From the NCBI RefSeq assembly GCF_037042905.1, contig NC_087249.1:46066001-46130000 (forward strand): a stretch of 64,000 bases of DNA, given 5' to 3'. The notes below the pieces were generated by a model, which saw nothing but the letters and a program-made list of their open reading frames with translations, ran no database searches and was not told the origin of the DNA. The DNA is from Lytechinus pictus. Lineage: Eukaryota. Made by a program: the position numbers and the translations under genes. This document shows positions 10,516 through 29,940 of the stretch, piece by piece (position 1 is the stretch's first letter; every line of letters begins with the position of its first letter).

Positions 10516-11932
10516 TTTTTTTTTTATTTATAGGTATTTTTTTAATTGTTTGCATTTGATTTCTGCATAGGTCTACAAATCATCAATTTTTTTTCTTGTT
10601 AAACATGGCGACAGATTAGTTTTCAATTATGAGGCCTTTTTCAATAATTCAATAATTACTTTGAATTGTGTTTGCAGTGTTTTCAAACTGCCCATTTTGA
10701 CAATTAATGGATCGAGGCATGGCCCTGGAAAGCTGCGATGCACCCCCATTTTTTTTCTTTGGGTGCTGCGTGTAATATTTTCCAAAGGGCAGTACCCCCT
10801 TGAAATCTGGAAAGTATGATAAATGGCAGAAATGTAATGAAATGAACGACATTTTCTTGGACCCCCCCTTTTTTTTTGCTTGTCAAATTTCTAATTTTGA
10901 ATTGAAACCCTTTTTTAGGGGGTTGTTTTTTTGTTGCTTGTCAAAATCACTTCAGCACACCCACTAGGGAAAAATGGTTCTCAGTGCCCTGGATGGGGGG
11001 GGGGGGGGGTGGTTATCAATTTCTGACCCCCCCTCCGTTTATAAAATTCTGTATCCGCCCCTGGCGACCACTGCCGGGTTGGAAGGTTGTTGAAATAACG
11101 TTTGGCGATGTCATTTATAAATTGATAGAATCTCCTGTATCTATTGTTGCTATGCCTGATGTGCACAAAATAAAGCATTTCGTTTTGGCTCCGCCGGCCG
11201 GCCACCTTAAGATTGGCCTGAGGGCGAATGTATATCCATCCGCGCGCTTTCACAGTCCATCATCAGCAGATTAGTTTGAATGAAGGGCTACAATTTCACG
11301 TTTATCAGTAGCATCCTACCAATTTATACATTTAATGTCATCAGAAAGGCAATAATAGAGGTTAGTTTATTTTCTAAATAATGTATTTTTATAAAATTAT
11401 TAAGAATCAAGTGAAATTTTGATAACTTGTTTTGTTACTTAATAATACAGATCGACGCATGTTATCGTGCAAGGTATATGAGGCGATAATGGTCGAGTGC
11501 ATTTTGCTTTTGCATTGAATTACAAACAGATCATGATTTAGACAGTGAAGCTTATTTTCTCACGGTTGAATTTAAAGTATGATTAATTTACCTTTTGTGT
11601 TGTATTAAAAATAAGTATGGTTCACCTTATTCATTGATTAATTTAAGGTACCATAATGTGTAAAGCATCACAGTAAAACGTTGTTTAAAATTTAAGCAAC
11701 GTTGTTTAATCCCGTCACTCTTACAACTAATTTTTAAAACTTTTAAACGATAGTTGACTATGATTATTGAGAAAGGGATGTTCTTCCCCACTTGAAATGT
11801 GAAACAGTTTTATTTTATTTACAGTTAAGAAAGCCTCCTACTTCCGACTCTAACCAAAACTTGGTCATAACAAGAAAATAGAAGTTTTACTCATTATTCG
11901 ACAATTGATATTCACCGACAATCATATTTAGT

Positions 11933-12166
11933 CAGGGGTGGATCCAGGATTTTCCAGGGGGGGGGGCACATTTTCCCTGGAAAATTTGACAAGCCAAAAA
12001 AAGGGTCCTCACCTGTGTTTGAATATTCAAATAAAAAAATAAATGTTGTGACTTTCAAAGGGGGAGCACACTTGTGTAAAAACGGCATATTTACACTAAA
12101 AATTGGGCTCTCAGAGGGGGGGGGGGGGCACGGGCCGGATGTGCCCATTCTCCGTCACCGCCACTG
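11933..12166. mobile_element. Non-autonomous hAT element
   Basis: CAGGGGTGG...CCGCCACTG termini with perfect 8-bp TSD TATTTAGT. Confidence 0.88.
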
Positions 12167-28219: not shown

Positions 28220-29090
28220 CGAATGCAGCCGGCAAATGCAGCGGAGAAGGGAGAAGCAGCAGCAGCTGTGGCGTATGCAGCCGGCAAAGCGACGGGGACG
28301 GGAGAGGCAGTGCGAATGCAACTGGCAAAAGCGACGGAAAAGGGAGAGTTAGGCGGGAGTTAGGGCGAGTGCAGTCGGCAAAAGCGGCGAAGAAGGTAGA
28401 GGCAGAGCGAAGGCAGCGATCAAAAGCGGCGGAGACGAGAGAGGCAGTGCGAAGCAGCCGGCAAAAGCGACGGAAAAGGGAGTTAGGGCGAGTGCAGCCG
28501 GCAAAAGCGACGGAGAAGGGAGAGTCAGTGCGAATGCAGCCGGCAAAAGCGACAGAGAAGGGAGAGGCATTGCAAAGCAGCCGGCAAAAGAGGCGAAGAA
28601 GGGAGAGGCAGTGCAAATGCAGCCGGCAAAAGCGGCGAACAAGAGAGAGGCAGTGCGAAGCAGCCGGCAAAAGCGACGGAAAAGGGAGAAGTCCTGGCGA
28701 ATGCAGCCGGCAAAGCGACGTAGAAGGGAGAGGCAGGGCGAATGCAGCCGGCAAAAGCGACGAAGACGGGAGAAGTCGTGGCGAATGCAGCCGGCAAAAG
28801 CGGCGAACAAGAGAGAGGCAGTGCGAAGCAGCCGGCAAAAGCGGCGAAGAAAGGAGAAGTCCTGGCGAATGCAGCCGGCAAAGCGACGTAGAAGGGAGAG
28901 GCAGGGCGAATGCAGCCGGCAAAAGCGACGAAGACGGGAGAAGTCGTGGCGAATGCAGCCGGAAAAAATGGCAGGGCGAATGCAGCCGGCAAAAGCGACG
29001 AAGACGGGAGAAGTCGTGGCGATTGCAGCCGGAAAAAAAGCTCCGGAAAACTGGAAAAGGGAGAGGCGGGGCGAGTGCAGCGTGCGAACA
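28220..29090. repeat. GC/purine-rich minisatellite, ~40 bp unit, ~20 copies, with a higher-order duplication
   Basis: Approximate consensus gcgaatgcagccggcaaaagcg(a/g)cgaagaagggagaggca. A ~170-bp block at ~28617 recurs at ~28786. Confidence 0.92.
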
Positions 29091-29940
29091 CGGCAGTGAT
29101 AGCGAAGGGTTAATGTGCATATTTATGTCTAAATGTCAATATTTATGTATTTGTTTATATTTATGTATATGTTAGTGCCTGGTTGTGAAATATTTATTAT
29201 TTATTCATCTTCCATTCACTGGGGTTTTTATATACTAACCATATTTCATATTACATAATTTTGTTTGTTTTGGTTTAGATCACCTTTCTGTTACACTAAC
29301 CCGGGGTCATGCTGCTACCTTCACGCGGTGACTCTGTTACGTGCAAGGGCGTCACGAGTAAAAAGGATGCAAGGGGCAGTCAACTTTGCTAAAACAGTTG
29401 AAGTTATGATTTGCCGCAGTTTTGGGGGAAAGTTATACACAATATAAAAGTTAGCTTGCAGAACAAGAAAAAAGTTGATGCCCAAAACTTGGTAATGCCC
29501 TTGCACTACCAAAGCAGCAATTAACGTGATTTATCTTTTTAAATTAATTTCTCTTGTGGTGTTCGTTTCGTATTGTAATTCATCTCATAGTATTTGATTA
29601 TTTCAAATGTAACCACTAACATGACTACAGAAAATGAAAGAGCACTCAATAGCTGAAATCCGTCTGTTTGGAGGAGTTTTAAAACAGTTTTGTACTTTTT
29701 TTTTCTTGTAAGGAAGCAAGACGAAGCCCAGCGGAGCTACCACAGCCGACGAAACAGACTGAAGCTTTACTCGACCTACATGCATAATTATATGGTACGT
29801 TTTACAATCGGGGTAACCAAACTGTGTCATTTGTCGAAAGTTGTTTTGTGTTTTTTCCTCAATTTGTCTGTGGATGTTGAAAACGACTCAAATTATCATT
29901 CTTTAGAATTTTGAGGCATAAGGTCACCCACTTATTTTAT

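What the first reader, a model, noticed from the sequence alone, without database searches (positions are those of the whole stretch)
11180..29100. Candidate repeat-modular, multi-exon lncRNA locus (Xist/Rsx-like architecture) upstream of the histone pair
Seen: about 17 kb with no credible protein but at least six blocks bounded by good acceptors and GT(A/G)AGT donors, all on the + strand. There is a promoter-like GC patch at ~11190-11260 (ATTGG, TGTATAT, TCACAGT) with a donor AG|GTTAGT at ~11361. Four distinct tandem arrays follow in series (20.7, 21.2-22.3, 22.8-25.8 and 28.2-29.1 kb), and the 21-kb array fills one predicted exon almost exactly. Established: Xist, Rsx and Firre use serial tandem-repeat domains as protein-binding modules. 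Inference: this may be an undescribed echinoderm scaffold lncRNA or small-RNA precursor. Architecture alone does not establish function.
Basis: partly seen in the sequence, partly recalled or inferred. Interest (0 to 1): 0.75.

Follow-up and report, generated by a model that had tools for sequence, protein, structure and literature searches.

The report
Spliced noncoding RNA gene family
The stretch holds a real, spliced, apparently non-coding RNA gene, one of at least 40 related copies in this sea-urchin genome that share a strongly conserved folded RNA domain. The tandem arrays downstream were not seen in any RNA, so the Xist-like picture is not supported.

Summary
The first three predicted exons are real. 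RNA contigs from four runs (two studies) join 11238-11360, 12302-12537 and 13806-14444 on the + strand through GT..AG introns. The 998-nt product has no ORF over 43 codons, and no ORF in the region hits Pfam.

The rest of the reading does not hold. No contig covers 17.2-21.2 kb, and 14444>16763 was not seen. The '22.8-25.8 kb array' is not a tandem array, and 25.93-27.78 kb is a high-copy transposon.

The locus is not unique. The genome holds at least 40 copies of its core, 12 copies of the promoter and first exon, and a conserved end block downstream of each locus or cluster.

The best-conserved part (87-95% identity against a 55-70% background) is a roughly 340-nt domain starting at the 14444 donor. 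It folds far better than shuffled sequence (z -7.2), in all 12 copies compared, with compensatory changes, and better on the + strand.

One contig joins donor 14444 exactly to the first coding exon of a GCNA-like gene 4.7 Mb away on the opposite strand. This is unexplained.

Verdict: a lncRNA gene family that most likely acts through a structured RNA domain. It is moderately interesting and is a new member of a known kind.

The parts
11130..11237 (+). Conserved promoter-proximal region of the family. The exact transcription start is not defined.
   Evidence: Aligned across 8 loci. 12 genomic copies of 11130-11440. RNA contigs begin at 11238, 11255 and 11257.
11238..11360 (+). Exon 1 (at least 123 nt), donor AG|GTTAGT.
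   Evidence: Spliced contigs in X2, X4 and X5. The donor and the 3' half of the exon are conserved in paralogs.
11930..12150 (.). Dispersed repeat of about 215 bp inside intron 1.
   Evidence: Many 76-82% identical copies genome-wide. Short high-depth contig matches come from other copies.
12302..12537 (+). Exon 2, acceptor TTCATAG|, donor AT|GTAAGT. Shared only with the closest paralog.
   Evidence: Joints 11358(+2)>12300 and 12537>13806. Splice contexts. Only C5:47.54 Mb aligns here.
13806..14444 (+). Exon 3 up to an internal or alternative donor, GA|GTGAGT.
   Evidence: Contigs in all four runs. Paralog conservation rises at 13800-13825. The last 35 nt have 0-3 mismatches in 10 other copies.
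14441..14779 (+). Conserved structured RNA domain. It holds a long imperfect hairpin (14459-14677) with a poly-C apex and a second, perfect hairpin (14719-14762).
   Evidence: 87-95% identity across 11 paralogs. MFE -105.7 kcal/mol, z -7.2. Folds well in all 12 copies. 96.8% of cells paired and 8 compensatory pairs. The + strand is 20 kcal/mol more stable than the - strand. No Rfam match.
14445..16385 (+). Probable unspliced continuation of exon 3 (long form). The 3' end is unknown.
   Evidence: X5 contigs 14643-16166 and 16185-16385 have the same depth as the spliced contig, and X1 has a contig at 15584-15771. Paralog conservation runs to about 15307. AATAAA at 15879, 15969 and 16086. This part is inferred.
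16743..20400 (+). No RNA support.
   Evidence: Direct repeats D14-D20. Similar units occur in 3-4 copies in paralogs. No special fold, z +0.2, +1.5 and -0.7. No coverage except an X4 contig from 16994.
18145..18460 (.). Dispersed repeat of about 310 bp inserted in the second unit.
   Evidence: Dozens of 76-95% identical copies genome-wide.
20773..20942 (.). 51-bp tandem array, 3.3 copies.
   Evidence: TRF. The region is shared with paralog C5:47.54 Mb at 76%.
21153..22302 (.). 42-45-bp minisatellite, C-rich on the + strand. A family feature.
   Evidence: TRF. Homologous arrays of about 0.4-5.5 kb lie between core and end block at 10 or more family loci. No frame stays open along the long arrays.
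22800..25800 (.). T-rich unique sequence with weak, irregular self-similarity. Not a tandem array.
   Evidence: Almost no genomic copies.
25933..27780 (.). High-copy 1.85-kb non-autonomous transposon with terminal inverted repeats of about 45 nt.
   Evidence: 94-97% identical copies, 7768 candidates. Inverted repeat I1.
28213..29038 (.). GC- and purine-rich 42-bp array, private to this copy.
   Evidence: TRF and the repeat finder. Absent from all 10 fetched paralog loci.
29114..29563 (+). Conserved end block of the family, with its core at 29295-29355.
   Evidence: 29 genomic copies, up to 94% identical. For most of the stronger matches the block lies about 9-50 kb downstream and on the same strand as a core or a core cluster. 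The AG acceptor at 29278 is not conserved in the closest paralog. No Rfam match and no special fold.

Best explanation
Window 11.1-16.4 kb is a real gene, presumably transcribed by RNA polymerase II, for a spliced, apparently non-coding RNA on the + strand. The exons are 11238-11360, 12302-12537 and 13806 onward, with an internal donor at 14444 and probably a long form running to at least 16.4 kb.

It is one member of a family of at least 40 copies that grew by dispersed and tandem duplication. Each full locus has the same order of parts: conserved promoter and exon 1, conserved exon 3, 1.45-kb units, a 45-bp minisatellite, and a conserved end block 9-50 kb downstream.

Selection acts on a roughly 340-nt RNA domain that begins at the 14444 donor and folds into a long imperfect hairpin plus a second perfect hairpin. 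I infer that the RNA works through this double-stranded domain. It could be a precursor of small RNAs, as a hairpin-RNA or miRNA-like locus, or a platform for proteins that bind double-stranded RNA. The donor-proximal pairing may also govern use of the 14444 donor.

The downstream arrays, the transposon and the triplicated units are DNA carried along with the locus. They are not shown to be part of the RNA.

Shown: splicing, strand, lack of coding capacity, family size and order, conservation profile, fold and covariation. Inferred: the long form of exon 3, any role of the hairpin, and the role of the end block.

My odds: real lncRNA family 0.85; function through the structured domain 0.5; small-RNA precursor specifically 0.25.
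For: - Splicing: spliced contigs with GT..AG joints appear in X1, X2, X4 and X5 from two studies. Splice contexts are canonical, and there is no complete ORF over 43 codons in the 998-nt product.
- Coding: no Pfam hit for any ORF tested.
- Locus order: paralogous loci are collinear.
- Family size: 39 further copies of the core, 12 of the promoter and exon 1, and 29 of the end block, most of the stronger ones downstream and on the same strand as a core.
- Conservation: it jumps at the exon-3 acceptor and peaks at 14425-14699. The exon 1 donor is conserved in 8 loci.
- Fold: z -7.2, with every paralog at z -3.6 to -7.5. Of 89 consensus pairs, 96.8% of cells are paired against 39-48% when partners are shifted, and 8 pairs show double changes against 0-2.
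- Strand: the + strand is more stable in all 12 copies. The perfect hairpin has an invariant stem and a variable loop.
- Expression: short contig matches at higher depth show that other family members are expressed in the same runs.
Against: - All RNA evidence is Logan contigs from small runs whose RNA nature is a guess for X1-X4 and unknown for X5. Contigs cannot show ends, strand or level. The strand rests on the splice dinucleotides alone.
- Contig breaks near 14439-14444 could partly reflect graph branching at the 35-mer shared by paralogs.
- The structure was derived from the same alignment on which pairs were counted, and most stem positions are invariant.
- No small-RNA data and no Rfam match.
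- High identity of the core could partly come from gene conversion.
- The 3' end of the RNA is unknown, and the arrays beyond 21.2 kb were never tested against reads.
Confidence: 0.72

Rival explanations
1. A single long scaffold lncRNA of the Xist/Rsx/Firre type, whose exons carry the serial tandem arrays as protein-binding modules.
For: - The promoter and the first three exons are as predicted.
- The 45-bp minisatellite keeps its place between core and end block in 10 or more paralogs.
- The end block lies downstream of a core at most of the loci where it was found, so the transcription unit could span the arrays.
Against: - No contig covers 17.2-21.2 kb, and 14444>16763 is not seen.
- There are at least 40 copies rather than one locus.
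- One 'array' is not an array, one segment is a transposon, and the GC-rich array is private to this copy.
- Constraint sits on the hairpin domain, not on the arrays.
Confidence: 0.08
2. A decayed composite repeat, either an old large mobile element or a segmental-duplication family, whose promoter and cryptic splice sites give incidental transcripts without function.
For: - About 40 copies, some in tandem clusters with spacing of roughly 10-18 kb.
- No coding capacity.
- The loci are full of other repeats.
- Exon 2 is not conserved beyond the closest paralog.
Against: - Conservation is very uneven, 87-95% in the core against 55-70% or less around it. It starts at the exon-3 acceptor.
- Compensatory changes and the strand asymmetry of the fold point to selection on an RNA.
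- No terminal repeats or coding remnants were found.
- Locus length varies from about 15 to 50 kb.
Confidence: 0.13
3. Exons 1-3 are 5' leader exons that are spliced onto protein-coding messages, in cis onto a far gene or in trans as a long spliced-leader-like donor RNA.
For: - One 3117-nt contig joins 14444 exactly to the acceptor of the start-codon exon of a GCNA-like gene at C5:41.37 Mb on the opposite strand.
- A 65-nt X4 contig has the size expected of a junction unitig.
- The donor and its pairing partner are among the best-conserved parts of the family.
Against: - Only one contig shows the letters. It comes from a run where the target message is very abundant, so a rare chimeric event would be enough.
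- No exon 1-3 homologue lies within 39.6 kb upstream of that gene.
- No Sm-site consensus is conserved.
- The leader would be about 1 kb with two introns, unlike any known spliced leader.
- A transcriptome survey found no spliced-leader trans-splicing in S. purpuratus embryos (PMC3460201).
- A structural variant or an assembly error is not excluded.
Confidence: 0.05

Closest known systems
Xist / Rsx / Firre (repeat-modular nuclear lncRNAs)
   Same: A spliced, non-coding transcript, presumably made by RNA polymerase II. Tandem repeats are present at the locus.
   Different: Here the repeats are not shown to be in the RNA. The gene is multi-copy (at least 40). Constraint lies on a hairpin domain, not on the repeats. 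Nothing is known about sex-specific or allele-specific expression.
Hairpin-RNA (hpRNA) and long miRNA-precursor loci, as described in Drosophila (from my own knowledge)
   Same: A long, imperfect, conserved inverted-repeat hairpin inside a non-coding transcript. The arms are more conserved than the apex, and G-U pairs make the fold strand-specific.
   Different: No small-RNA reads were available and there is no Rfam match. The hairpin starts right at a used splice donor and occurs in about 40 copies.
Long nontranslatable maternal poly(A) RNAs with interspersed repeats in sea-urchin eggs (ISp1 type; from memory, not checked in the library)
   Same: Echinoderm polyadenylated RNA without coding capacity, from repeat-rich loci. 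The chimeric contig suggests possible germline or egg expression.
   Different: No sequence comparison was possible. Tissue and stage of the runs are unknown.
Spliced-leader RNA genes
   Same: Multi-copy genes. The conserved donor is embedded in a stem. One exact junction to a foreign first coding exon was seen.
   Different: The upstream part is about 1 kb with two cis-introns, there is no conserved Sm site, and only one junction was seen. The phylum is not known to use spliced-leader trans-splicing (PMC3460201).
Clustered variable-exon and constant-exon loci (protocadherin or UGT1A type)
   Same: In four clusters, 3-8 tandem core units are followed by a single conserved end block on the same strand.
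   Different: Non-coding. Splicing of the cores to the end block is not shown, and its acceptor is not conserved in the closest paralog.

Membership tests
lncRNA (generic) | Transcribed and spliced. | tested here: met
   GT..AG joints 11360>12302 and 12537>13806 in 3-4 runs from two studies.
lncRNA (generic) | No long ORF and no protein homology. | tested here: met
   The longest complete ORF is 43 codons. No Pfam hits. Frame-breaking indels between paralogs.
Xist/Rsx-like repeat-modular lncRNA | Tandem-repeat domains lie inside the mature RNA. | tested here: inconclusive
   No contig covers 17.2-21.2 kb. The arrays at 21.2-22.3 kb and 28.2-29.0 kb were outside the stretch searched and laid.
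Xist/Rsx-like repeat-modular lncRNA | A single locus acting on its own chromosome. | tested here: not met
   At least 40 copies of the core on 8 chromosomes.
Small-RNA precursor (miRNA or hairpin RNA) | A stable hairpin conserved through compensatory change. | tested here: met
   z -7.2; 96.8% of cells paired and 8 pairs with double changes; strand asymmetry.
Small-RNA precursor (miRNA or hairpin RNA) | Small RNAs of 20-30 nt map to the arms. | not testable with these tools
Known RNA families (snoRNA, miRNA, snRNA, ribozymes) | Match to an Rfam covariance model. | tested here: not met
   Only two histone 3' stem-loops reach the gathering score in the window. Nothing credible at 13.7-15.4 kb or 29.1-29.7 kb.
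Spliced-leader RNA | A short RNA (under about 150 nt) with a conserved Sm site after the donor. | tested here: not met
   The leader is about 1 kb with two introns. The U-run candidate is interrupted and varies among paralogs.
Spliced-leader RNA | The donor is joined in trans to many different messages. | tested here: inconclusive
   One junction with letters, to the GCNA-like gene, and one contig of the expected size without letters.
Transposable element | Defined termini, target-site duplication, or coding remnants. | tested here: inconclusive
   No terminal repeats or protein remnants were found. Homology to the closest paralog runs upstream past 7859. Flanks of most paralogs could not be fetched.

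The most novel reading that the evidence does not exclude
A sea urchin carries about 40 genes for a long RNA whose conserved folded domain starts exactly at a splice donor, and that donor can hand the upstream exons to unrelated messages in trans. This was seen once, onto the start-codon exon of a GCNA-like germline gene 4.7 Mb away on the other strand. It would be a long, intron-containing 'spliced-leader-like' donor RNA in a phylum thought to lack leader trans-splicing.
Probability: 0.05. Interest if true: 0.85.

Novelty: new member of a known kind. Interest (0 to 1): 0.5.

Why it matters
Very few echinoderm lncRNAs have anything that points to a working part. Here a whole family shares one sharply bounded, strand-specific, covarying RNA domain, which gives a concrete target for small-RNA sequencing, editing analysis and protein pull-down.

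The family's layout is a useful case for how lncRNA genes duplicate and which parts survive. That layout is promoter, exon 3 with its hairpin, minisatellite and end block, sometimes with several cores before a single end block.

The exact junction between exon 3 and a distant gene, if reproducible, would bear on trans-splicing in deuterostomes.

Tried and rejected
- **Coding arrays.** The periods 51, 42 and 45 are multiples of 3. However, no frame stays open along the 3.5-5.5 kb arrays of paralogs, where the longest ORF is about 270 aa and several frames are open at once. Rejected.
- **Coding exon 3 or core.** Frame-breaking indels of 7, 9 and 11 nt occur between paralogs, and there is no Pfam hit. 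Rejected.
- **snoRNA host gene or known small RNA.** No Rfam match.
- **The 1.45-kb units as further hairpin modules.** They share weak similarity with the left arm but fold no better than shuffles. Rejected.
- **Linkage of the family to histone H3/H4 pairs.** Other late-type pairs lie at unrelated places. Rejected.
- **A family copy upstream of the GCNA-like gene, explaining the chimeric contig in cis.** None within 39.6 kb, and no copy of the 35-mer there.
- **A homologue of the GCNA-like first coding exon inside the window or its paralogs.** None.
- **Looking up window ORFs on public transcript contigs.** Nothing on record.
- **Earlier notes of the scan.** No related entry by sequence or by words.
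Full report
**What is at the coordinates**

Between 11.2 and 29.1 kb there is no credible protein. ORFs of 80 aa or more are either short or lie in the tandem arrays, where several frames on both strands are open at once. Six of them give no Pfam hit.

TRF confirms three arrays:
- 20773-20942: 51 bp x 3.3 copies.
- 21153-22302: 42-45 bp, with a 298-bp higher order.
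- 28213-29038: 42 bp with a 168-bp higher order, GC 56% and purine-rich on the + strand.

TRF finds nothing there even at score 30, and a sensitive self-comparison gives five weak matches of 35-126 nt.

- A local triplication of a 1.2-1.5 kb unit at 16.74-20.4 kb. It contains the predicted exons 4-6, and all their 'good' splice sites are copies of one another. Another first-stage note, s1-320223, also saw this triplication.
- A 1.85-kb element with 45-nt terminal inverted repeats at 25933-27780, present genome-wide at 94-97% identity.
- Dispersed repeats at 11930-12150 and 18145-18460.

**RNA evidence**

Five public runs hold part of 11180-21179. Four are guessed to be RNA (8-9% of the words) and one is of unknown kind (25%).

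Four of them (X1, X2, X4, X5) were laid on 11180-17179. Contigs in X2, X4 and X5 join three segments with no mismatches:
- 11238/11255/11257 to 11358(+2)
- 12300-12537
- 13806 onward

X1 has the second junction, off by one letter. Both introns are GT..AG on the + strand with good polypyrimidine tracts.

The spliced 998-nt product has no complete ORF longer than 43 codons.

The predicted 14444>16763 junction was not seen. Nothing is left for 17.2-21.2 kb, and the predicted exons 4-6 have no support in these samples. An X4 contig starting at 16994, not at a splice site, is the only signal there.

The X5 contigs downstream of 14444 have the same depth as the spliced contig. Paralog conservation also continues to about 15307. 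I therefore infer that a long form of exon 3 reads through the 14444 donor to at least 16.4 kb. AATAAA signals lie at 15879, 15969 and 16086.

Caveats: these are Logan contigs of small runs, so they show no ends, strand or level. Contig breaks near 14440 may partly reflect sequence shared by expressed paralogs.

**The locus is one of a family**

Own-genome searches show that the whole stretch is collinear with other loci. The closest is C5:47.53-47.55 Mb on the minus strand, at 68-79% identity. Others lie on C1, C3, C12 and C14.

Dedicated searches gave these counts:

| Query | Copies found |
|---|---|
| Core 14100-14790 | 39 further copies on 8 chromosomes |
| Promoter and exon 1 | 12 copies, each 3-11 kb upstream of a core |
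| Block 29185-29420 | 29 copies |

The core copies include tandem clusters of 3-8 units with spacing of roughly 10-18 kb on C7, C1 and C15. For most of the stronger matches, the 29185-29420 block lies about 9-50 kb downstream of a core, or of a whole cluster, on the same strand.

The 42-45-bp minisatellite is present between core and end block at 10 or more loci, with lengths of about 0.4-5.5 kb. The GC-rich array is private to this copy.

Short higher-depth contig matches show that other members are expressed in the same runs. The neighbouring H3/H4 pair is not part of the family unit, because other late-type pairs lie elsewhere.

**What is conserved**

In an alignment of 12 copies, identity to the window changes as follows:

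| Region | Identity to the window |
|---|---|
| Intron 2 | 24-37% |
| From the exon-3 acceptor onward | 55-75% |
| 14100-14250 | 81-92% |
| 14425-14549 | 87-95% |
| 14650-14674 | 94% |
| After about 15175 | falls off |

Tiles kept at 85% or more in at least four loci are the 3' half of exon 1, the stretches 14100-14199 and 14400-14699, and 16980-17059. Promoter-proximal motifs and the exon 1 donor are aligned in 8 loci. The last 35 nt of exon 3 have 0-3 mismatches in 10 other copies.

Indels of 7, 9 and 11 nt and a poly-C run of variable length rule out coding.

**A structured domain**

Positions 14425-14790 fold at -105.7 kcal/mol, against -69.2 +/- 5.1 for shuffles (z -7.2). The fold has two parts:
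- A long imperfect hairpin at about 14459-14677, with the poly-C run at its apex.
- A second, perfect hairpin at 14719-14762, whose stem is invariant and whose loop varies.

Evidence that this is a conserved RNA structure:
- All 12 copies fold well, z -3.6 to -7.5.
- On the consensus structure, 96.8% of cells are standard pairs, against 39-48% with shifted partners.
- 8 pairs carry changes on both sides, against 0-2 in the shifted controls.
- In every copy the + strand is more stable than the - strand, by 20 kcal/mol on average. About 11% of paired cells are G-U.

An alternative 10-bp stem pairs the last bases of exon 3 with 14468-14477, the same partner used by the distal arm. Pairing could therefore gate the donor; this is inference.

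No Rfam family matches. The 1.45-kb units share weak similarity with the left arm but do not fold specially. The end block has no fold signal and no Rfam match, and its AG acceptor is not kept in the closest paralog. It looks more like a DNA-level or sequence-level element than an exon.

**An unexplained junction**

One X1 contig of 3117 nt, with mean depth about 1040, matches exon 3 at 13942-14444 without a mismatch. Exactly at the donor it continues with 30 letters that occur once in the genome, at C5:41369377-41369406 on the minus strand.

Those letters are the first bases after a perfect acceptor, in an exon that carries a start codon. The gene has these features:
- an acidic, low-complexity body
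- a C-terminal piece with weak SprT zinc-ribbon and HMG-box hits

This resembles GCNA/ACRC. The name is from memory and only weakly tested.

The gene lies 4.7 Mb away on the opposite strand. No homologue of exons 1-3 lies within 39.6 kb upstream of it, and the window and its paralogs hold no homologue of that exon.

A precise exon-exon junction needs junction-spanning reads. It therefore points to trans-splicing, or to a structural difference or assembly error. Because the target message is very abundant in that run, a rare event would be enough. A 65-nt X4 contig (the 35-mer plus 30 letters) has the size of such a junction, but its letters were not shown.

A transcriptome survey found no leader trans-splicing in S. 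purpuratus embryos (PMC3460201). I treat this junction as a lead, not a finding.

**Verdict**

There is a real spliced lncRNA, but it is a member of a multi-copy family. Its constrained part is a folded RNA domain beside exon 3. The serial arrays are not shown to be in the RNA.

I commit to this reading: the family acts through the double-stranded domain, as a small-RNA precursor or a platform for proteins that bind double-stranded RNA. This has moderate confidence.

Another agent's note names the species as Lytechinus pictus. I did not check this.

Noticed in passing
window 13942-14444 joined to G000:C5:41369377-41369406 (-), locus L020 1501-1530: An RNA contig joins the exon-3 donor exactly to the acceptor of the start-codon exon of a GCNA-like gene 4.7 Mb away on the opposite strand. 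This could be trans-splicing, a structural variant or a misassembly.
   Followed up: partly
window 25933-27780: A 1.85-kb non-autonomous transposon with 45-nt terminal inverted repeats. Thousands of candidate copies at 94-97% identity suggest recent activity. Other copies carry about 250 bp more in the middle.
   Followed up: partly
window 29295-29355: A 61-nt core of the family's end block is also found alone, at 83-92% identity, at places with no linked core (for example C3:4448933, C15:15439536, C4:13180477). Its nature is unknown. It has no Rfam match and no special fold.
   Followed up: partly
G000 C7:34.75-34.80 Mb, C7:39.89-39.96 Mb, C1:34.18-34.25 Mb, C15:15.59-15.62 Mb: Tandem clusters of 3-8 core units with spacing of roughly 10-18 kb, each followed by a single end block. 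The layout recalls variable and constant exon clusters. The sequences could not be fetched.
   Followed up: no
window 29941-30905: A tandem 163-192-bp repeat that also occurs inside paralog C1:24.81-24.83 Mb and near the GCNA-like gene. It is a dispersed satellite-like element.
   Followed up: no
window 34830-36663: A divergent late-type histone H3 (-) / H4 (+) pair with two Rfam histone 3' stem-loops. Similar pairs lie on C18, C20, C1 and C10, and early-type 7.3-kb tandem repeats lie on C57, C66 and C83.
   Followed up: partly
window 107-1162 (-): A 351-aa ORF, acidic and serine-rich, with no Pfam hit. It may be an exon of an upstream gene on the minus strand.
   Followed up: no
window 1756-2372: A run of 617 N (a gap or masked).
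   Followed up: no
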